The notes under the pieces were generated by a model, which saw only the letters and a list, made by a program, of their open reading frames with translations, was not told the origin of the DNA and did no database searches. From assembly GCF_026571515.1 (NCBI RefSeq), contig NW_026867067.1, positions 62,001-126,000 on the forward strand: a stretch of 64,000 nucleotides of DNA, in the 5' to 3' direction. Source of the stretch: Ruditapes philippinarum (lineage: Eukaryota). The translations under genes and the position numbers were made by a program. This document shows positions 3,887 through 29,610 of the stretch, in pieces; the first letter of the stretch is position 1, and each line of letters opens with the position of its first letter.

Positions 3887-4216
3887 CAGTTATTTTCAAT
3901 TCTCTTTTTCTGACAAAGTAACCGCATTCGAAAGTAACGTCTGCATAGTCTTGTAGAAATTTACCATGTATCGTAAGATAATACACCTTCATATTTCCAA
4001 TCCATTTGCAATTTGACGTCATATTATCAGAATGTTGTTCTACGCCATAACGACATTGTGGTTTTATTTTGGCCACGTGACCAAAATTGTTCGAGAAATA
4101 GATTATTGTATCGTTTGGTAGATTTTCGGTGTAACAGCAGATGGAAAATGGAGTATCAAACAGAGGGACGTCACATGTTGAAATTTGAACGCTGCCCCAT
4201 GGCGTCATTTCTTGAG
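3887..4216 (-). CDS. Intact phase-1/1 exon paralogous to the first Ig-like exon of the Ig-TM-HECT gene
   Basis: Flanked by tttctag| and |gtaagg, 330 nt, open. QEMTPWGSVQISTCDVPLFDTPFSICCYTENLP...DYADVTFECGYF aligns with ITSWADVQISTCDAPIAYKPFSLCCYTENLP...DYADDIFECGFY at 22393-22722, which has the same length and phase. Confidence 0.8.
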
Positions 4217-5639
4217 CTAGAAATAAAAATGAAGTTTGGGGAAATAACTGTATATTCCTTGATATTTTTATTTAAGAAAACTATAATTCATTCTCTGAGC
4301 TAGTATTGTTAATTTGAGTCTGGCAAATACTATATATACATGTTGTTGTTTGTTTTATTTGTTGTTTTCATCTGCATGCCTCCAGATGAGCCAACAAATT
4401 TCAATAAAATCAAACTTGAGAATGAGTGTTGACATTTTATGAAAGTTAAGAAATTCAATATAAAAGTAATAATTTACACGTTATGTGTGCTTATTGACTG
4501 GTTTTGCAGTATTTTTCACTATATCCCAGATAGCATTCTATATGGGACCCATGTGGGGCCCATATGGGCACCTATATGGGTCCCATTTGGGCTGCCCATA
4601 TGGGCCCCATATAGGAAGTGCAACCGGGTTCCAAATGGGTCCCATCTGGGCAGCCCTTATACTCAATATGGGATTCACATGGGCCCCATCTGGGCAGCCC
4701 ATTTACACAATATGGGCCCCACATGGGCAGCCCTTGTACTAAATATGGGTTTCAAATGGGCAGCCCAGATACTTCCATTATGGGTAGATTTTGAATTCCG
4801 GGGTAGATCTATTTTCAATTACTTCAATTATAAGTTTGCTGGACGTTAAGATAGCAACCGCTTGCTACAGGGCATGATTCTTGTACTTGCATTAAATATT
4901 CAAGTGATGTTTTAACTCATTCCGTTTCCTGGAACAGACAGATTATGGCACAAAGCCTTTATGATCATGCAAGAAAACAATACACAATGTATATGCTTTA
5001 ACAATGTAACTTTATTTAGTAATCTCACTTATGGTAAGTGTATATCATATACATACAGATTCTCAATACATTCTGTGGACGCCTGATGTCAACAAAGAAA
5101 CCTTTACTTATGTAAATAAACTTAGAAAAGTGTACAATATAAAATCCTAAACTGTACATATTTGTAAATCCACAGAATTTCATTTTGACTACATAGTTTT
5201 TAATTCAAAAATACAGAAATATTAATTATTATTCAAAAAGTCCTATGTAGTAAATATTACTTTGGTACACTTAATAAGCAACATGTAATGGAAAACTGTT
5301 TATAATGTACGAACAAAATAATTAAAAATGCAGTTTCATAACATTAGATACCAAGGAAAAATGAAACTTATGCTAGACACTGGTAAAACTTTACAGAAGG
5401 TCTTTGGAACTCCAAGAAATATATGTGTATAATGTTTAAATTTCAGTGAATCAGCAGTATGACCCCAAATGTCTTTTTAACTTTCTACATAATTCATAGA
5501 AAAAGTATTATACATTTACTGTAATTCATTACAAATTTCTATCTACCAATTACTTTCATTTTCAAATGATATAGATCTACATCAATTAATATAAAAAGTT
5601 GTTCATTACAACCATGTATTACACTTTGGTATGGTAGTG

Positions 5640-14627: not shown

Positions 14628-17020
14628 AGGCCCATTATGCCTCAGAAATGTATTTCAATTTTTTTATCAAAAGGTTTTTAATTTTGGTGTATTTTATAGT
14701 AATCAAAAACTTATTCATTGGCCAATTTTACCGGAACCCATTTTTTCATCAGTCGCTTTTTGTAGTGAATGAGTATGCTGTATGTAACAAGAGGGCCATG
14801 ATGGCCCTGAGGTCGCTCACCTGTATATAGCCCCCCCCCCCCGGGCAAATGTTTACCCAAGGGCTTTTATTTGTTTATTTGAACAAACTTGGTAGATACC
14901 CATAAGAAGATGTTTCATGCTAAACATCTAAGTTCTAGCTCATTGGGTTTTTTAAAAGAAGATTTTTTAAGTTTTTACTATACACATATAGTTAAAAACA
15001 ATGACACCCCTGGGGCAGGGCCAGTTTTGACCCCGGGCTTTTATTTGAACAAACTTTGTAGATATTTACTTAAAGATGTTTTATGCTTAATATCTAAACT
15101 CTAGCTATTTGGTTTTTTCAAAGAAGATTTTTAAGTTTTTGCTATACACATATAAGGAAAATCAATGACCCCCAGGGCGGGCCAGTTTTGACCCCAGGGC
15201 TTTTATTTGAACATACTTGGTAGACACCCATTAGAACATGTTTCATGCTACATATCTTAGCTCTAGCTCTTTGGGTTCTTTAAAAGAAGATTTTTTTAAG
15301 TTTTTACTATATGCATATAGGGAAAATCAATGACCCCCTGGGGCGGGGCCAATTTTGACCCAAGGGCTTTTATTTCAACAAACTTGATAGACATTCACTA
15401 GAAGATGTTTCATGCCAAATATCTAAGCTCTAGCTCTTAAGGTTTCTTTAAAAGAAGATTTTTTAAGTTTTTACTATATGCATTTAGGGAAAATCAATGA
15501 CCCCCTGGGGCGGGGCCAATTTTGACCCCAGGGCTTTTATTTGAACAAACTTGGTAGACATTCACTAGAAGATGTTTTATGCCAAATATCTAAGCTCTAG
15601 CTCTTACAGTTTTTTTTTTAAAAAAAGATTTTTTAAGTTTTTACTATATGCATATAGGGAAAATAAAATGACCCCCTGGGGCGGGGCCAATTTTGACCCC
15701 AGGGTTTTTATTTGAACAAACTTGGTAGACACTCACTAGAAGATGTTTCATGCCAAATATCTTAGCTCTAGCTCTTTTGGTTCTTTAAAAGAAGATTTTT
15801 TAAGTTTTTTACTATATGCATATAGGGAAAATCAATGACCCCCTGGGGCGGGGCCAATTTTGACCCCAGGTTTTTATTTGAACAAACTTGGTAGACATTC
15901 ACTAGAAGATGTTTTATGCCAAATATCTAAGCTCTAGCTCTTACAGTTTTTTAAAAGAAGATTTTTTAAGTTTTTACTATATGCATATAGGGAAAATCAA
16001 TGACCCCCTGGGGCGGGGCCAATTTTTGACCCCAGGGCTTTTATTTGAACAAACTTTGTAGACACTCACTAGAAGATGTTTCATGCAAAATATCTTAGCT
16101 CTAGCTCTTTTTGGTTCTTTAAAAGAAGATTTTTTAAGTTTTTACTATATGCATATAGGGAAAATCAATGACCCCCTGGGGCGGGGCCAATTTTGACCCA
16201 GGGTTTATTATTTGAACAAACTTGGTAGACATTCACTTAGAAGATGTTTCATGCAAAATATCTAAGCTCTAGCTCTTACAGTTCTTTTAAAAGAAGATTT
16301 TTAAAGTTTTTACTATATGCATATAGGGAAAATCAATGACCCCCAGGGGCGGGGCCAATTTTGACCCCAGGGGCTTTTATTTGAACAAACTTGTAGACAC
16401 TCACTAGAAGATGTTTCATGCCAAATATCTTAGCTCTAGCTCTTTGGGATCTTTAAAAGAAGATTTTTTAAGTTTTTACTATATGCATATAGGGAAAATC
16501 TATGACCCCCTGGGGCGGGGCCAATTTTGACCCCAGGGCTTTTTATTTGAACAAACTTGGTAGACACTCATTAGAAGATGTTTCATGCCAAATATCTAAG
16601 GCTCTAGCTCTTAGGGTTGTTTAAAAGAGATATTTAAAGGTTTTTCTTTCGCGTTGCCATGGCAACCAGAGTTCTGTATGAATTAAATTCTTTTGAACAA
16701 ATTTTTAAAGGTGACCACCAAAGGAACATTCCTGTGAAGTTTGGATGAAATTGGCTCAGTGGTTTATGAGGAGATGTCATTTAAAGCAAAAGTTTACGGA
16801 CGACGGACGGACGGACGGACGGACGCCGGACGAAAAGCGATCACAAAAGCTCACCCTGTCACTTTGTGACAGGTGAGCTAAAAAACCTTTTCAACATTTT
16901 GCTACTTTTATGCTTAATTATTGTACATTTATCGCCAGGCACTTTTTAAACATCATGAAATTTATGCTTGCACTTTCTAAAGAAGTAAAGCTGTATTTGT
17001 TTCTGAGGTAATATGTGCCT
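14628..17020 (+). mobile_element. Kolobok-like TTAA MITE split by a HINE insertion
   Basis: The 5' part (14628-14785) and 3' part (16882-17020) are colinear with the intact copy at 11811-12127. TTAA on both sides. Confidence 0.8.
14786..16881 (+). mobile_element. Helentron-associated non-autonomous element (HINE; pearl/DTC84-like) with ~11 core repeats of ~168 bp
   Basis: Starts aacaagagggccatgatggccct (hairpin). Subterminal gctcacc at both ends, tandem cores, a (ggac)n microsatellite at ~16797-16830, and a terminal palindrome gctcaccctgtcactttgtgacaggtgagct followed by an A run. Confidence 0.9.
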
Positions 17021-22392: not shown

Positions 22393-25300
22393 ATATTACG
22401 TCATGGGCTGATGTTCAAATCTCAACATGTGACGCACCAATAGCTTATAAACCATTTTCACTTTGCTGCTACACGGAAAATTTACCAAGTGGTGCATCAG
22501 TATTTTTCTCAAACAACTCCGGTCATTTAGCCAGGATAGGGCCATCTTGTGACATTTGGTATTATGGCGTCGGCGAAGCTTCCGGTTTGATACTGAGTTG
22601 TACCAAAAAGGGGAACGCTACGGTTTACAGTTTAACGCTACAGAACAAAATTTTTACAGACTACGCAGACGACATCTTTGAATGTGGTTTCTATGGTAAC
22701 AAGTCAAGAACAACAATAACCGGTAAAATTTGAGTGTAAATTTAAACTTGTATCTAGAGTATTTACAGATTTGTAAGTAGGCCTAAATGTATCATATTTA
22801 ATTTTTTTACGTACGCGCGCAAGCTATCATAATCTGTCTATCTTTCATTATCTAATACAGTCATTAAATAAAGCATGTTAGCTTGTAAGCTCTATTATTT
22901 GATTATGCATGATTGTACGTTTCGGTCGTGTTATTTACCAATTACAAAGCTTCCTGATTTTTTCTTCAGTCCTAGATAGTCATACCACAAGAGTTTTCAT
23001 ACCTGGTTCAAGTCCTGTGTTGTATTACAAGTTACTAAATAGTTTGGCAAGTAACATAAGATTATACATGCTCCAGTCTAACGTTACACTCCTTGAAGTC
23101 GATCAAAAAAACAACGTGGCGTACTATGATACTGGCATTATGTTCAACGGAAATGTTCATCAAAACAACTTCTCCGCAATAATTCTAAACTTACAAAGAC
23201 AAAGGAACGGGACTTATGTCTGTGAATACACTATTGATGATGGCACAACTGTACGAGACGGCATAACTGTTGGTGTACTAGGTAAACCTTTATAGGTTTT
23301 GATTTATTTTTACTTCACTATTCTATTTTTGTTTTTTACTAAATAATCTTATATTCTTCTCATTTCACTGGTTAAAGTAAATCATATGAGCATGCTTTAG
23401 AGTTTGCAATACCTTTTACAGGAAACCCAAAGGTGCCAGAAATTAGAAATACCACGTGGAAAGTGTCCGGAAGTAAAATATCCGGAAATGTGACATGTGA
23501 CGCAGTTTCCGGTTCCGCTGCTCCACTTTTCTTCAAGCCTCTTTTCATGACTAAATGGGTCATTCCATCTAAAGACGATTGGCCGGAAGGAAACAAAGGT
23601 TACGATTCAACAAGCAATGGATCTTCAGCTTACATATCAAACGTTGAATGTAGCACTACAAATTTACTGCCGATATATTGCTCAGTGTCCGAAAGTGATT
23701 TAATTTCAGACAGAAGTCCAGGGCTTTTTCCAAACATAATATGCAAGTATTTTCGATTTTATCATATGAATGTGTGGTTAAGCATTTGTATAATGGGAAA
23801 ATTAGGATATTAACTTAACAATTGACTAATGATTAAATCACTATTTATATTTCCAAGCCTGTTGATAAAAAATTGTGATGTCAAAAGTTCAGAGATTATG
23901 TTCTTGAAGACCCTGTAGCGCATGATACTGTTTTATTTGCTTGGCATCAATGGATATGTCAAACTCAATACCAACATGTTCTTTATAAATTGAATGAGCC
24001 ACTTCTGAATTTGTTTGATAAGGCAAATACACATAAGGTGATCAAGTTGTTGACTTGCACCTTCAGCCTGAAATTGTCCGTCCGCTTAGCTCAATACAAT
24101 AAGCATCGGATAATTATTTCAGAGGTGGCAGGTTTGATCCTCGGACCAGGCGTAATTTCTCCGTGACAAATAATCTCGGACATTGGACATTGAGTCTAAA
24201 GGTCATTTGAGCCGCGTCACGACAAAACCAACATAATGGGTTTGCGACCAGCATGGATCGAGAGCAGCCTGCGCATCCGCGCAGTCTGATCAGGATCCAT
24301 GCTGTTGTCTTACCAACTCTATTACAAGTAAAGAAACTGATAGCGAACAGCATGGATCCTGATCAGACTGCGCGGAAGCGCAGGCTGGTCTGGATCCATG
24401 CTGGTCGCAAACGCATTATGTTGGTTTTGTCGTGACGCGGCTCATTTGTCCCTCACCGTTGATTCAAAAATTATGCAGGATTAGTAAGTGGTCACTTTTG
24501 GAGAAATTGGTAATTACCGGTTTGTAATCCAGCCTACCAGGACTGTCATAGTTCATATGTGTGGAAATAATGTAAAAAAGGGAGAGAAAAAAATATAAAA
24601 AACTTACGAGTAAAATGTGTATGTATTATTTCATTTTAACAAATCATATAATATTTTGATAAAGGTTCTGAATTAGGAGTGTCAAAACCAGTAAGTGATG
24701 ACGACGATCTTGGTGACTCAACATTCAGAGCTCTCGTTATTGTCATATGTATCTCAGGTATATATTTTCTAACCATTTGTTGGGGGTTAGTTTACCCAAA
24801 ACATGCTGATTTTCTTAATGAATTTGCAAACTGACATGGCTCTATACTTGTGGCAAACACTAATAATTTCCCGTTCGAGCAGATCAATGGTTAAATAGAG
24901 TTTCGCTTTTCTGGTTGCGGTGGACTTTAGGTACTGTTCCAGACACAGGGTGATGTAATATCACGTTAAAAATGACCCATGAAGTAATTTTCAATGCTTG
25001 ATTCGATCAAACTAAGATGTAAAACTGATCAAAACGTAGCAGTTTTTATCAGTCCCGTTTGATATTGAGCCTACGGGTGTTTTCTTTTCGACTTTCACGG
25101 TTGGCAGGTGGGATCACAGTCCGTCTGTAAGCTGGCTGTATAGCGTCTCAAAAGTAAATAAAATTATGTCTCTGACAAGATTCTAACACAAACACAAATG
25201 GGTGAATGTTCGTCTTAATTACAGTGTTCCATTACCATTTTGAAGTACGATATTCATACACTGTATTAAGAAACCGCTCAAGAAACGTAAACACAAATGG

Positions 25301-28300
25301 TCACTTAATAAAATAGTCTCTTAACAAAATTTTGCTAATTTTGAACAAAAACAATCATTTGTGTTAACTTGTATTACGTGTTTGTATTTCATGTCAGTAG
25401 TATGAATATTATTTTTTAAAGTCATCAATCTGTGTGGCATTTTCGTATTGAAAGACTGTGAATAGTACATTAAAATATCAAGAGCTTTATCACATAACGC
25501 ATGATGTATGCATTGCATAATGACTAATGATAAAAATAAAGTATAGCATAAAAGAAATGAGCCGTGCCATGACAAAACCAACATAATGGGTTTGCGACCA
25601 GCATGGATCCGGACCAGCAGGAGAGAAGTAGAGAACAGCATGGATCCTGATCAGACTGCGCGGATGCGCAAGCTGGTCTGGATCCATGCTGGTCGCAAAC
25701 CCATTATGTTGGTTTTGTCATGACGCGGCTCAAATATCCACTGCGTTATCAATTGCCCGATAGATGTGCTTATAGGTTTAAATGTAAATATTAATATAAA
25801 TATAATAACGATTGTCCTTGGAAGTGATTTGACGATAACACTCCTTGCGGAACCAGTTACGTAGATAACCAGCATATCAGCGTAAGATACGCACAGAAAT
25901 CAACTTTTTTACAAAGATTTTGTGCAGAAGTTGCGTAGATAAAGGTTTAAGGTATATGTTATGAATACAATAATTTTGTATGCGTAGATACGATTAATAA
26001 GTACTGCTACTTTAATTTTCAGTGACCAGCACCGTTTTCATCTTTGTAATTACTATGGTCGTTGCGTAAGTTCCCTTTTTAAATTTTCATTAGTTTGCCA
26101 CGTTGATCTCTCAAGTCTTTATTACTTTTAAATTTATCAATTCTTTTTTTTAAGTTTATTTCGAATCTAAACGGTCTTTTAAGATGCTACATTTAAGAAA
26201 CATCCATGCTATTTATTTTGGCAACGTTCATATTAGGAAATTTACAGTAGCATATTTCAATTTTTAGGCAATTTACAGTAGCATATATCAATTCTAAGGC
26301 AATTTACAGTAGCATCTATCAATTATAAGGCAATCTACAGTAGCATATATCAATTTTTAGGCAATCTACAGTAGCATATATCAATTCTAAGGCAATCTAC
26401 AGTAGCATATATCAATTTTTAGGCAATTTACAGTAGCATATATCAATTTTTAGGCAATTTACAGTAGCATATATCAATTTTTAGGCAATTTATAGTAGCA
26501 TATATCAATTTTTAAACAATTTACAGTAGCATATATCATCTTTAAGGGAATTTACAGTAGCATATATCAATTTCAAGGCAATCTACAATATTTGATTACC
26601 AACATTGACCACTGTACATTTACTTTCCCATTTATTTTAACAGCCGGCACAGTCGCATCGACATGAATTTAAAGAGAAAGATGAGGATATGCTGTGTATG
26701 TTTTAGAAGGTGCTGCAGATGTTGTATTGGTAAGATTTACTTTCTTAAACACATTTTCATTATACATCATTTCATTAAAATCATTTTTTTCTTCAGATTT
26801 TTCTTTTCAAATTGTTAAGGAACCGGTTTGTCTTTGACTATAAACTCTTAAATGTAACAGTTACAAGGACTACTTGTGACCTCGGACGAGTTTTCTAAAA
26901 TTTAAGTCTTTTAATATGGTCTGAATGAACTCCTTTTTGTAAAGGGCTTGCATGATATTAATTAATACAGAAACTGATCTATTTTAAGAATATTTGCCGA
27001 GTTCTGAATCGGATTCCGATTCGGATCTTGAAAGAAGTATTCAGCGAAGCAGACGAGATGTTGGCGGCCTTGACCCTTTTGGTAGGAGGCGGAGGAGTGA
27101 TGAGCGACCTACCCTTGCAGATGGATGTAAGTTGCATATAAATTGGCACGTCATATCTTAGATCATTAAGAAGTATTAACTTTAAATCAAAGTTAACTCT
27201 TTATAGATTATTCGAGTATATGGGCAAAACTGATTGTTGCTTCACTTCTGCACGAATTTTGTTCTCAATAACGTAGCACTGTTTTAATACCCAAATGTCT
27301 AAAATGTTCATCCTTACATTTCATGAGATTTTTTCATAAAAACTGTGTTTTAAAAATTATGACAATTCTGTCTCAGTCCTTTACATAGCCACGTGATTAA
27401 CCTTATATATCACGTGATGTTTCTTTTCTTTTTACAGTGCGATCAGAACGAGATTCTCGTCCGAATGAAGTTCAACAAGCGCTGGAACGCATTGCAATAG
27501 AGGAGTCCAGACAGAACTATCAGATGAATATTGCTCAGGGTTCAGGTTTGTTGTCTATCATAAAAGATTCTTTGACGTCATTCTCTGCTTTTTATGAAAA
27601 ATCATTGGATGATGAATTAATGTAATAAATCATCTAGCCTGCCTGGGAAAAGAATGTGTTCATCATTTTAAGCATTTTTATCTTCTTTTGGGGAAATATT
27701 GGGAAGGATAAGTGTTCTAGTCCGTCTGGAAAAGGGGTTTTGTACATAATTTGCAGTATTTAGAGGGGAAGTATTAGGGAAAGATTTCAAAGAAATCTTT
27801 GCAGTAGTCTGTCATTTTCTGTATACATGTATTATGGAAAATGCTGCTTCACAAAATTGCAATCGTGTAAATGACTTTGTCTATACACAGTTTCAAAGAT
27901 ATTAGCGTTTTCTCTGCCCTTTTGTCTTTTCTTGAACGATATTTGGAACGATTTCAAATATGTCACTGCATTTTTCATTGGAAAAAAATCCTACACATGT
28001 AAAACAAGTTGTGACGAGTCTCAAAAATATCCGTAAAATCTCTCATAAAAGTTTTTCTTATTGTATTAATATGTAATAACTCATACATTTTAGGAACAAA
28101 CGATGGTGGTCAGTTCAATGCCTTATTTTCACAACCAGGTGATAATATTGATGAGATAGGCCTTGGATTTCCAACAATTGATGTAGGAGAAAGTAGTTCT
28201 GGGCCGCAAGGAGCAGAAGGAGGTGCTGCTCCAACAACGGTAAACGATGATCTAGCAATGCTGAGAGAGGTTGAATCGTGTATGTATACTATTTTGGCTA

Positions 28301-29610
28301 TTCCAGTGAAAAGGTCTGTTTTAAATGACAGGGAATTATTATTTCTAGAATACCTTAAAAACCAATATATATTGACTTCCATAAACATAATTTAAAATTT
28401 ATATCATCAGAGAAAATCAAAGGAATCATCTTTTTTTCGGATATTGACGGTAATTAAAGATACGTGAACCATGATACATGTATATTTGTATTTCGTTCTT
28501 TCCTGCTCACTCTAAATGCAGACATAAATCATGTGTATATATTTTTTAGTGCTTGATCGCCATCATCGACATTTAGGACGTGACGTCATCCCTCTTCAAA
28601 TATCGAGAGAAAATATTTTAGAGAATTTGATTGGTTATTATACTGAAGAATCTCTCGCAAGATCTCGCATTACTGTGAAGTTTATCGGTGAGGAAGGCAT
28701 GGACTGTGGTGGTGTCACCTACGATATGTTTACAACATTTTGGTACCGAGCTCAAGAGGAATTTTTCATTGGTTACGAGGCAGTGGTTCCGTATCTTCCC
28801 CCTCAAAGATTCACAGACGATTCAAAATATCGAGTTCTCGGTCGCATATTATCCCATTCCATTGCCGTTATGAAAGAATTTCCGATACATATGTGTAAAA
28901 GCACGATTATCGCGATGATCTACGAAACTACTGATGTTTCGGCAGAAATTCTACTTGAAGATTTCCTGTACTTTCTGGACAGCCATGATCGTAATTTGGT
29001 TACCACGGCAATAAACGATTACAGCAGTTTAACTTCAGATCAAGCAGACGAACTTATGACCATATTTGAAAGGTATGAATATGCGATCAGAATAACAGCC
29101 GAGAACTTTAAGCATCACGTGACTCAATTGGCACGCCACGTGACCTGTATACGCCCAAAACCATTGCTTGACAAAATGAGATCGGGTATACCACAGTCTC
29201 ATTTGGAACATTTTTGGTCGAATTTCCATTTAAAAACCCTCGGCATCCTGTTTAGAGCTCTGAAACCAACTCCGGAAAGAGTTATCGCGCGCTTAAAAAC
29301 TTCCGATGACAATCCGCGTCTTTCTCGGCATCAAAGACGGGTATTCGATTTTCTTAAAGACCTGCTGAAAGAAATGTCGGAACCAGAGCTTGAGACTTTC
29401 CTTCATTTTGTAACAGGAAAGAAGTCCATACCACGAGAGAAGATAACTATTGAGTTTACAACAGAAACAGGGAAGCTTAGATTACCAAAGGCTCACACAT
29501 GTTCAAACATGATGGAGTTGCCAGCATCATACGAAGATTACGAAACCTTTCGCTCCGAGCTCAAACATCTTTTGGCATCCGATGAAGCACTGAAAATGTC
29601 AATGGAGTAG
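22393..29610 (+). CDS. Type-I membrane protein: 3 Ig-like domains + TM + Cys-rich segment + UIM-like motifs + HECT E3 ubiquitin ligase domain (~892 aa plus an unplaced signal-peptide exon)
   Basis: Exons 22393-22722, 22970-23281, 23422-23742 (GC donor), 24665-24757, 26023-26065, 26644-26729, 26989-27126, 27438-27545, 28094-28279 and 28550-29610 splice in frame without stops. V-set motif FSAIILNLQRQRNGTYVC; 9 N-glycosylation sequons in the ectodomain; TM ALVIVICISVTSTVFIFVITMVVA; HECT motifs VKFIGEEGMDCGG, FLHFVTG and LPKAHTCSNMMELP. Confidence 0.85.
24080..24580 (+). mobile_element. Degenerate tRNA-derived (Meta-like) SINE interrupted by a MITE
   Basis: A box ttagctcaa and B box ggtttgatcc. 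The body resumes after 24447 (gtccctcaccgttgattca...). Confidence 0.5.
24209..24443. mobile_element. Palindromic MITE, GAG..CTC termini, 4-bp TSD ATTT (Sola2-like)
   Basis: gagccgcgtcacgacaaaaccaacataatg... with an inverted arm; attt on both flanks. Confidence 0.88.
25559..25731. mobile_element. Same MITE family, internally deleted, TSD AAAT
   Basis: gagccgtgccatgacaaaacc...gacgcggctc with aaat on both sides. Confidence 0.88.
26235..26590. repeat. Intronic 31-bp minisatellite, ~11 copies
   Basis: ggcaatttacagtagcatatatcaattttta repeated head to tail. Confidence 0.95.
28550..29610 (+). CDS. Terminal exon encoding the entire HECT domain (G2E3-like)
   Basis: LQISRENILE...VKFIGEEGMDCGGVTYDMF...FLHFVTG...LPKAHTCSNMMELPASY, catalytic Cys retained. 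Acceptor attttttag| at 28549. Confidence 0.93.

What the first reader, a model, noticed from the sequence alone, without database searches (positions are those of the whole stretch)
22393..29610. Candidate receptor-type HECT ubiquitin ligase: Ig ectodomain and single TM fused to an intact HECT domain
Seen: ten exons splice in one frame (only fragments appear in the ORF track). They give Ig-like x3, a 24-aa hydrophobic helix, a basic/Cys-rich segment, a low-complexity linker and a full HECT domain with catalytic Cys (AHTC). Established: the well-known membrane-spanning E3s with ectodomains or loops (RNF43/ZNRF3, the GRAIL/RNF128 PA-RING family, MARCH) are RING-type, whereas NEDD4, HERC and G2E3 HECTs are soluble and reach membranes through C2 domains or adaptors. 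Inference: this is a cell-surface receptor that couples extracellular recognition directly to HECT ubiquitination, plausibly in invertebrate immunity or allorecognition. I know of no described protein with this architecture, but I cannot search.
Basis: partly seen in the sequence, partly recalled or inferred. Interest (0 to 1): 0.92.

Follow-up and report, generated by a model that had tools for sequence, protein, structure and literature searches.

The report
Bivalve membrane receptor with HECT ligase
This Manila clam gene really does encode one protein with three immunoglobulin-like domains on one side of a membrane and a complete HECT ubiquitin ligase on the other; all major bivalve groups have it, and I found no description of such a protein in the literature I could search.

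Summary
The one correction is the exon 3/4 junction, which is 23742/24665 with a GC-AG intron. Spliced contigs from three public runs in three studies show the junctions, and one 1630-nt contig runs from the second Ig exon into the HECT exon.

The genome is Ruditapes philippinarum. RefSeq splits the gene into LOC132734709 and LOC132734702. A 905-aa ORF from a transcript assembly (P0155) holds the whole protein: leader, three Ig-like domains, a transmembrane helix, a basic Cys-rich segment, a linker with UIM-like motifs, and HECT.

An AlphaFold2 model (mean pLDDT 81) was searched with Foldseek. It matches three-Ig arrays and HECT domains of HUWE1, Smurf2 and NEDD4. The Cys of the AHTC motif lines up with the SHTC motif of Rsp5.

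The same architecture occurs in Mercenaria, Sinanodonta, Potamilus, Solemya, Mizuhopecten, Ylistrum, Mytilus and Pinctada. On a quick HECT tree these proteins form one clade.

Surface location, ligase activity and an immune role remain untested. Membrane-anchored HECT ligases already exist (AREL1, PfUT), so HECTs are not all soluble, but neither has an ectodomain. The leader exon was not found in the window. The scan holds three side notes on this same stretch and none on other DNA.

The parts
22393..22722 (+). Exon encoding Ig-like domain 1 (phase 1-1). It starts at an acceptor, so a leader exon must lie upstream.
   Evidence: Open frame and splice sites. tblastn of P0155 residues 20-128 gives 96% identity. 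RNA-contig depth is 20-24 in the first bin. The model shows a beta-sandwich at 25-128.
22970..23281 (+). Exon encoding Ig-like domain 2 (phase 1-1), with a V-set-like NGTYVC motif.
   Evidence: Contigs begin at 22969/22970, and the 23281/23422 joint is seen in 3 runs. Pfam V-set scores 16.9 bits, below the cut-off. P0155 is 84% identical here. The X1 contig has 0 mismatches.
23422..23742 (+). Exon encoding Ig-like domain 3 (phase 1-1). It ends at a GC donor (GCAAGT).
   Evidence: Contig pieces 23420-23742 in X2 and X5. P0155 residues 233-340 are 96% identical. The Cys...Trp...YC pattern is in the translation.
24665..24757 (+). Exon encoding the acidic stalk and the first half of the transmembrane helix.
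   Evidence: The 24757/26023 joint is seen in 3 runs. A start at 24665 follows from the lengths of the pieces of X2 record 8. P0155 residues 341-370 are 100% identical.
26023..26065 (+). Exon encoding the second half of the transmembrane helix (ends in phase 2).
   Evidence: Joints on both sides in 3 runs. Kyte-Doolittle 2.85 over residues 362-380 of P0155. Model helix 358-399.
26644..26729 (+). Exon encoding the basic, Cys-rich juxtamembrane segment. The reference is 15 nt longer than the transcripts, and the difference keeps the frame.
   Evidence: In all 3 runs 11 letters replace 26644-26669, and the 26729/26989 joint is present. Net charge is +6 and there are 7 Cys just after the transmembrane helix.
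26989..27126 (+). Exon encoding an acidic Ser/Asp run and the first UIM-like motif.
   Evidence: Contig pieces 26988-27126 in 3 runs. The motif is canonical (hydrophobic-x-x-Ala-x-x-x-Ser) in the Mercenaria protein and in P0160. Pfam gives no UIM hit.
27438..27545 (+). Exon encoding the second UIM-like helix (…ALERIAIEESRQ…).
   Evidence: Joints 27126/27438 and 27545/28094 in 3 runs. The motif is conserved in heterodont and unionid members. Model helix 462-489 has low confidence. Pfam gives no UIM hit.
28094..28279 (+). Exon encoding the low-complexity linker and the first part of the helix that leads into the HECT N-lobe.
   Evidence: The 28279/28550 joint is seen in 3 runs. Model helix 540-559 (pLDDT above 90) spans the junction at residue 553, and Glu551 is invariant in the family.
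28550..29610 (+). Single exon encoding the HECT domain, with catalytic Cys in AHTC, 35 residues from the C-terminus, and the stop codon.
   Evidence: Pfam HECT E 1.1e-19. 100% identity to XP_060577479.1. Alignment to the SHTC motif of Rsp5. Foldseek matches HUWE1, Smurf2 and NEDD4 HECT domains at E 6e-14 to 1e-12.
3888..4217 (-). Ig1 exon of a head-to-head paralogue. The rest of that gene lies upstream of the window, and its HECT exon carries stop codons.
   Evidence: tblastn 48% identity. The own-genome search places Ig2, Ig3 and a HECT exon with 7 stops further along the minus strand of the contig.

Best explanation
The locus is one gene for a type I single-pass membrane protein of about 905 residues. 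In order it has a short leader, three Ig-like domains carrying many N-glycosylation sequons, an acidic stalk, one transmembrane helix, a basic Cys-rich (probably palmitoylated) juxtamembrane segment, a disordered acidic linker with one or two UIM-like helices, and a complete C-terminal HECT ubiquitin ligase domain on the cytosolic side.

It belongs to a bivalve-wide family that appears to have arisen once among HECT proteins without a transmembrane segment.

Shown here: the transcript, the architecture, the topology signals, the folds, and conservation of the catalytic motif.

Inferred: the protein works as a membrane-tethered HECT E3. Engagement or clustering of the Ig ectodomain would bring HECT domains together. 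They would then ubiquitinate the protein's own tail or the tails of neighbouring membrane proteins, driving endocytosis, degradation or signalling. The UIM-like helices would bind ubiquitin in cis to tune this. That would make it the HECT counterpart of transmembrane RING ligases such as RNF43/ZNRF3.
For: - **Transcript:** spliced contigs in 3 runs from 3 studies. One 1630-nt contig links Ig2 to HECT.
- **No retrocopy:** the own-genome search matches exon by exon only, so no intronless copy explains the spliced contigs.
- **Full-length ORF:** P0155 is in the same 90% cluster as the RefSeq fragment and maps exon by exon onto the window.
- **Homologues:** proteins of 860-1140 aa with the same layout come from four bivalve subclasses.
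- **Transmembrane segment:** among 150 HECT relatives only this clade has a strong hydrophobic segment upstream of the HECT domain. It forms one clade with SH-aLRT 96.
- **Topology:** 12 sequons in the ectodomain against 0 in the cytosolic part, and +6 charge after the transmembrane helix.
- **Folds:** model pLDDT is above 85 for the Ig domains and above 90 for HECT. Foldseek matches three-Ig arrays and HECT domains with probability 1.0.
- **Catalytic motif:** Cys870 and the AHTC motif are invariant in the 8 family members, and Cys870 is invariant in all 60 aligned HECT sequences. It aligns to the catalytic motif of Rsp5.
- **Junction-spanning helix:** a conserved helix crosses the exon 9/10 junction.
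Against: - RefSeq annotates two separate genes.
- The leader exon is not found in this assembly, so the start of the reference allele is unverified.
- The three contig runs are only guessed to be RNA. The one certain RNA run gave almost no reads, with a single junction read.
- The UIM has no Pfam support.
- There are no data on localisation, activity, ligand or substrate.
- The human G2E3 HECT domain, also divergent, is reported to be non-functional (PMC3673628), so catalytic activity cannot be assumed from sequence.
Confidence: 0.85

Rival explanations
1. The protein is membrane-anchored but lives in the ER, Golgi or endosomes with the Ig domains in the lumen. It would act in trafficking or quality control rather than as a cell-surface receptor, as AREL1 does at the ER.
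For: AREL1 shows that a single-pass HECT ligase can be an organelle resident (PMC12864862). Nothing here tests localisation. Expression in the one certain RNA run is very low.
Against: A leader plus a glycan-rich three-Ig ectodomain, and a Cys-rich juxtamembrane segment typical of palmitoylated post-ER proteins. No KDEL- or KKxx-type retrieval motif is visible at the C-terminus, which ends ...KMSME. These are weak arguments.
Confidence: 0.25
2. These are two genes, as in RefSeq: an Ig/transmembrane gene and a cytosolic HECT gene. The joined form would be rare read-through or an assembly chimera.
For: The RefSeq models LOC132734709 and LOC132734702. Logan contigs can be chimeric, and P0155 is only 84% identical to the window in Ig2.
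Against: - The same junctions appear in 3 runs at the same depth across all exons.
- The same fused layout appears in at least 8 other bivalve genera, from independent annotations.
- A conserved helix crosses the exon 9/10 junction.
- RefSeq's Ig fragment reads through the GC donor into the intron, and its HECT model starts at an internal Met. Both look like prediction artefacts.
Confidence: 0.04
3. The HECT domain is a pseudo-enzyme and serves only as a docking scaffold. The protein would be an Ig adhesion or signalling receptor with an inert tail.
For: The HECT is divergent: E is only 1e-7 to 1e-5 against solved HECT domains. The human G2E3 HECT is reported to be non-functional (PMC3673628).
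Against: The catalytic Cys, the AHTC motif and many N-lobe and C-lobe positions are invariant across the family. dN/dS of the HECT exon is 0.13-0.19. The bilobal fold is predicted with pLDDT above 90.
Confidence: 0.1

Closest known systems
AREL1 (KIAA0317), ER-resident single-pass HECT E3
   Same: A HECT ligase held on a membrane by one transmembrane helix, with the catalytic domain in the cytosol (PMC12864862). The AREL1 HECT structure 6jx5 is among the Foldseek matches.
   Different: The AREL1 transmembrane helix is at the extreme N-terminus and the rest of the protein is cytosolic, so there is no ectodomain. Here the helix sits mid-protein, behind about 340 residues of Ig-like ectodomain. 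AREL1 is only rank 36 in Foldseek and does not appear in the sequence searches against solved structures.
Transmembrane RING E3 receptors (RNF43/ZNRF3, PA-TM-RING such as RNF128/GRAIL)
   Same: A type I layout with an extracellular recognition domain, one transmembrane helix and a cytosolic E3 catalytic domain.
   Different: The catalytic domain here is HECT, which forms a thioester with ubiquitin, not RING. The ectodomain is Ig-like, not a PA domain. Pfam finds no RING.
PfUT, Plasmodium HECT ligase with four predicted transmembrane domains
   Same: An integral-membrane HECT ligase (PMC4022464).
   Different: PfUT is a 3893-aa polytopic ER/Golgi protein with an armadillo-like fold. It has no Ig ectodomain and comes from an unrelated lineage.
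Other animal HECT proteins without a transmembrane segment, found as relatives (scallop, unionid, sturgeon, sea cucumber, beetle)
   Same: Their HECT domains are 25-43% identical to this one. Unionid P0010 and P0011 are sister to the clade on the quick tree.
   Different: None has a strong hydrophobic segment upstream of the HECT domain or an Ig-like hit in Pfam.

Membership tests
HECT ubiquitin ligases (Pfam PF00632) | Match to the HECT profile above the curated cut-off | tested here: met
   71.6 bits for the exon and 68.5 bits for P0155, against a cut-off of 23.9.
HECT ubiquitin ligases (Pfam PF00632) | Catalytic Cys in the C-lobe about 35 residues from the C-terminus | tested here: met
   Cys870 of 905, in AHTC. 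It aligns to SHTC of Rsp5 and is invariant in 60 sequences.
HECT ubiquitin ligases (Pfam PF00632) | Bilobal HECT fold | tested here: met
   Model residues 540-905 have pLDDT above 90. Foldseek E is 6e-14 to 1e-12 against HUWE1, Smurf2, NEDD4 and UBR5.
HECT ubiquitin ligases (Pfam PF00632) | Ubiquitin thioester formation and transfer | not testable with these tools
   Needs biochemistry.
Immunoglobulin superfamily ectodomain | Ig profile match above the cut-off | tested here: inconclusive
   V-set scores 16.9-23.4 bits against a cut-off of 26, and only in domain 2.
Immunoglobulin superfamily ectodomain | Ig-like beta-sandwich fold | tested here: met
   The model has three sandwiches with pLDDT 85-95. 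Foldseek E is about 2e-11 against titin I67-I69 and against three-Ig T-cell receptor and antibody chains. The Atlas nearest named clusters are V-set, I-set and C-set (a lead only).
Immunoglobulin superfamily ectodomain | One domain per phase 1-1 exon | tested here: met
   The exons are 330, 312 and 321 nt, each 2 bases + whole codons + 1 base.
Type I single-pass membrane receptor | N-terminal signal peptide | tested here: inconclusive
   P0155 and its homologues start with short hydrophobic leaders. No signal-peptide predictor is available, and the leader exon is not found in the window.
Type I single-pass membrane receptor | One transmembrane helix with the positive side C-terminal and glycan sites N-terminal | tested here: met
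   Kyte-Doolittle 2.85. Charge +6 after the helix. Sequons 12 against 0. The same holds in 7 of 8 family members.
Type I single-pass membrane receptor | Cell-surface location and ligand binding | not testable with these tools
   No experimental data.
Transmembrane RING E3 (RNF43/ZNRF3, PA-TM-RING) | RING finger in the cytosolic tail | tested here: not met
   Pfam finds no RING or zinc-finger hit in P0155 or its homologues. The Cys-rich segment is only about 15 residues long.
UIM-containing proteins | Match to the UIM profile or consensus | tested here: inconclusive
   No Pfam hit at E up to 10. The consensus spacing is met in the Mercenaria protein and P0160 for motif 1, with Ser in place of Ala in this clam.
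G2E3 / G2E3-like metazoan HECTs | PHD/RING-like zinc fingers N-terminal to a divergent HECT; grouping with G2E3 on a tree | not tested
   No G2E3 sequence was available by reference. No zinc-finger hit was found. None of the names that sources give to the relatives mentions G2E3.

The most novel reading that the evidence does not exclude
This is the first receptor-type HECT E3. In this reading a cell-surface Ig ectodomain recognises an extracellular partner (microbial, or self/non-self cells, including the transmissible cancers of bivalves) and directly switches on a HECT ligase in the same polypeptide. That would be a signalling logic so far known only for RING ligases. The multi-copy, mosaic Ig1/Ig3 exons would then be a variable recognition repertoire.
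Probability: 0.3. Interest if true: 0.85.

Novelty: new variant of a known kind. Interest (0 to 1): 0.62.

Why it matters
HECT ligases are thought to reach membrane targets through C2 or WW domains or through adaptors. The known membrane-anchored ones have no ectodomain. A conserved family that wires an extracellular Ig module directly to a HECT domain would add a new class of transmembrane E3. It would give a natural system for asking how HECT activity can be gated from outside the cell. It would also add a candidate to the large, poorly understood set of bivalve surface receptors.

There is a practical point too. The RefSeq models for this clam split the gene in two, so domain-architecture surveys that rely on them will miss it.

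Tried and rejected
- **Leader exon:** it was sought by fuzzy peptide match, a degenerate DNA pattern in the window and the whole genome, and a scan for Met + hydrophobic run + phase-1 donor. Nothing credible turned up. The best-looking candidate, at 16083-16137, lies inside a repeated element and was rejected.
- **The look-up of encoding contigs:** it was closed, so the P0155 transcript contig could not be fetched.
- **UIM:** Pfam gave no hit for either motif.
- **Diversifying selection:** dN/dS between this gene and its paralogues is below 1 in every domain. Values around 1-1.7 among the near-identical type-B copies rest on very few changes, and at least one of those copies is a pseudogene, so I do not count them.
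- **Word-based homologue searches:** searches with the ectodomain found only two close relatives. The wider family came from the HECT search and a scallop query.
- The database protein P0155 served as a stand-in, and single exons were used by reference. No complex prediction was run, because I claim no specific binding partner.
Full report
**What is in the sequence.** The window is AT-rich animal DNA with no gaps. On the + strand between 22393 and 29610 there are ten open segments with splice signals that join in one frame. They are 22393-22722, 22970-23281, 23422-23742, 24665-24757, 26023-26065, 26644-26729, 26989-27126, 27438-27545, 28094-28279 and 28550-29610. Every boundary is phase 1 except the 26065/26644 junction, which is phase 2. 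Each of the first three exons is a phase 1-1 unit of 104-110 codons.

**Transcript evidence.** I laid four public runs on 22650-28649. Contigs of X1, X2 and X5 come from three studies. They are labelled RNA only by guess, but they are spliced. They show joints at 23281/23422, 24757/26023, 26065/26644, 26729/26989, 27126/27438, 27545/28094 and 28279/28550, all GT..AG. Depth is the same across all exons within a run (88, 103 and 22).

One X2 contig of 1630 nt runs from the Ig2 exon through every later exon, and about 520 nt into the HECT exon. The lengths of its pieces fix the exon 3/4 junction at 23742/24665. That is a GC-AG intron with donor GCAAGT, slightly different from a GT-based join.

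All three runs carry an allele 15 nt shorter at the start of exon 6, and it keeps the frame. The one certain RNA-seq run (X24, 12% of it read) had almost no coverage and a single junction read.

The own-genome search matches the protein exon by exon only. So no intronless genomic copy explains the spliced contigs.

**Identity of the gene.** A HECT-exon search of 1.8 billion representatives returned XP_060577479.1 of Ruditapes philippinarum at 100% identity. It is LOC132734702, 513 aa, and starts at an internal Met in exon 6.

The same 90% cluster holds LOC132734709, a 201-aa model. It starts inside Ig2 and reads through the GC donor into the intron. The cluster also holds P0155, a 905-aa ORF from a 2792-nt transcript-assembly contig.

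P0155 maps onto all ten exons. Identity is 96-100%, except 84% in Ig2 and lower values at the short exons 5-6, which include the 15-nt indel. It adds an 18-aa hydrophobic leader.

So RefSeq splits what the transcripts show as one gene. P0155 was used as the stand-in.

**Architecture and folds.**
- **Hydrophobic segment:** P0155 has one strong segment at 362-380, Kyte-Doolittle 2.85.
- **Glycosylation sites:** there are 12 N-glycosylation sequons before it and none after.
- **After the helix:** there is a +6 net charge and 7 Cys within 40 residues behind it.
- **Model:** AlphaFold2 with a 60-sequence alignment gave mean pLDDT 81. It shows three beta-sandwiches (25-128, 130-232, 238-340; pLDDT 85-95), a helix at 358-399, a disordered linker with a low-confidence helix at 462-489, and a HECT domain at 540-905 (pLDDT above 90).
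- **Fold search:** Foldseek against the PDB matched HECT domains of HUWE1, Smurf2, Smurf1, NEDD4, UBR5, Rsp5, Tom1 and AREL1 at E 6e-14 to 3e-11. It also matched three-Ig arrays (titin I67-I69, three-domain T-cell receptor and antibody chains) at E about 2e-11.
- **Pfam:** HECT is called well above threshold. The V-set hit on Ig2 is below threshold.
- **Catalytic motif:** the C-lobe motif PKAHTCSN aligns to PKSHTCFN of Rsp5.
- **Junction-spanning helix:** the helix at 540-559 that leads into the N-lobe spans the exon 9/10 junction and contains an invariant Glu. The HECT exon is therefore not a complete module on its own.

**Distribution.** Full-length proteins with the same order of parts come from:
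- Mercenaria (Heterodonta)
- Sinanodonta and Potamilus (Palaeoheterodonta)
- Mizuhopecten, Ylistrum, Mytilus and Pinctada (Pteriomorphia)
- Solemya (Protobranchia)

Eight members align throughout, with conserved ectodomain cysteines, the GTY motif of Ig2 and the AHTC motif.

Among the 150 best HECT relatives, only these have a strong hydrophobic segment upstream of the HECT domain. On a quick maximum-likelihood tree of the HECT region they form one clade, SH-aLRT 96. The only other rows inside it are three short HECT-only fragments. The sister rows are unionid and scallop HECT proteins without a transmembrane segment. The careful tree search did not finish, so this is a quick tree only.

The UIM-like motifs occur in heterodont and unionid members (four copies in Potamilus) but not in scallop or Solemya. 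Pfam does not call them.

**Paralogues.** The window is C15554:62001-126000 of the assembly.
- A head-to-head copy lies on the minus strand. Its Ig1 exon is at window 3888-4217, and its HECT exon carries seven stop codons.
- A further copy lies nearer the start of the contig.
- Contigs C12548, C5808 and C7003 hold further copies or partial copies.

These four copies resemble each other (type B) and differ from this gene. Against this gene:

| Domain | Amino-acid identity | Synonymous divergence (dS) |
|---|---|---|
| Ig1 | 51-55% | 1.5-1.7 |
| Ig2 | 81-84% | 0.10-0.18 |
| Ig3 | 56-61% | 0.6-0.76 |
| HECT | 83-88% | about 0.55 |

They show a mosaic history, most simply gene conversion on Ig2 and an older split of Ig1. 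dN/dS between the types is 0.13-0.5, so positive selection is not shown.

**What is known.** AREL1 is an ER single-pass HECT ligase with the helix at its extreme N-terminus and everything else cytosolic (PMC12864862). PfUT is a HECT ligase with four predicted transmembrane domains (PMC4022464). The eukaryote-wide HECT survey (PMC3673628) and the bivalve HECT survey (PMC11353290) mention neither transmembrane nor immunoglobulin domains. Phrase searches for transmembrane or receptor-like HECT, and for the locus names, found nothing. The library is not the whole literature, and I could not query InterPro.

**Verdict.** The architecture is real, expressed and old. Its reading as a surface receptor that gates HECT activity is reasonable but untested, as is any immune role.

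I class it as a new variant of a known kind: a HECT E3 in a type I receptor layout. It is analogous to transmembrane RING ligases but not a member of that group.

Noticed in passing
window 24201-24451 and 25555-25739: Two palindromic MITE-like elements sit in introns 3 and 4. Their arms are about 106 nt long and 93-95% complementary. In RNA-like contigs their summed depth is 10^4 to 10^5 times that of the gene's exons, so this is a very abundant transcribed repeat family in this clam.
   Followed up: partly
window 26233-26587: A 31-bp unit is repeated 11.5 times (90% matches) inside intron 5.
   Followed up: partly
window 26644-26669: The reference carries 15 extra nucleotides at the start of exon 6, and they keep the frame. 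All three transcript runs have 11 letters in place of these 26, which changes ARHSRIDMNLK to ARRHVK just after the transmembrane helix.
   Followed up: partly
window 22970-23281 versus G000 C12548, C5808 and C15554 copies: Exon-by-exon synonymous divergence from the paralogues differs about tenfold: 0.1-0.18 for Ig2 against 1.5-1.7 for Ig1. The transcript-derived P0155 looks like a mosaic of the two paralogue types in Ig2. This suggests gene conversion or exon exchange within the family.
   Followed up: partly
window 23743-23813 and 26687: RefSeq splits this gene. LOC132734709 reads through the GC donor at 23743 into the intron, and LOC132734702 starts at an internal Met in exon 6. The unusual GC-AG intron and the repeat-laden introns probably caused the split.
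   Followed up: yes
G000 C15554:32091-33156 (upstream of the window, minus strand): The HECT exon of the head-to-head paralogue carries seven stop codons. RefSeq annotates a 130-aa fragment of it as LOC132734700. This copy is a pseudogene.
   Followed up: partly
window 15960-16200: A unit of about 170 bp is repeated directly and contains a short Met-initiated hydrophobic ORF that mimics a leader exon. I rejected it as the gene's first exon.
   Followed up: yes
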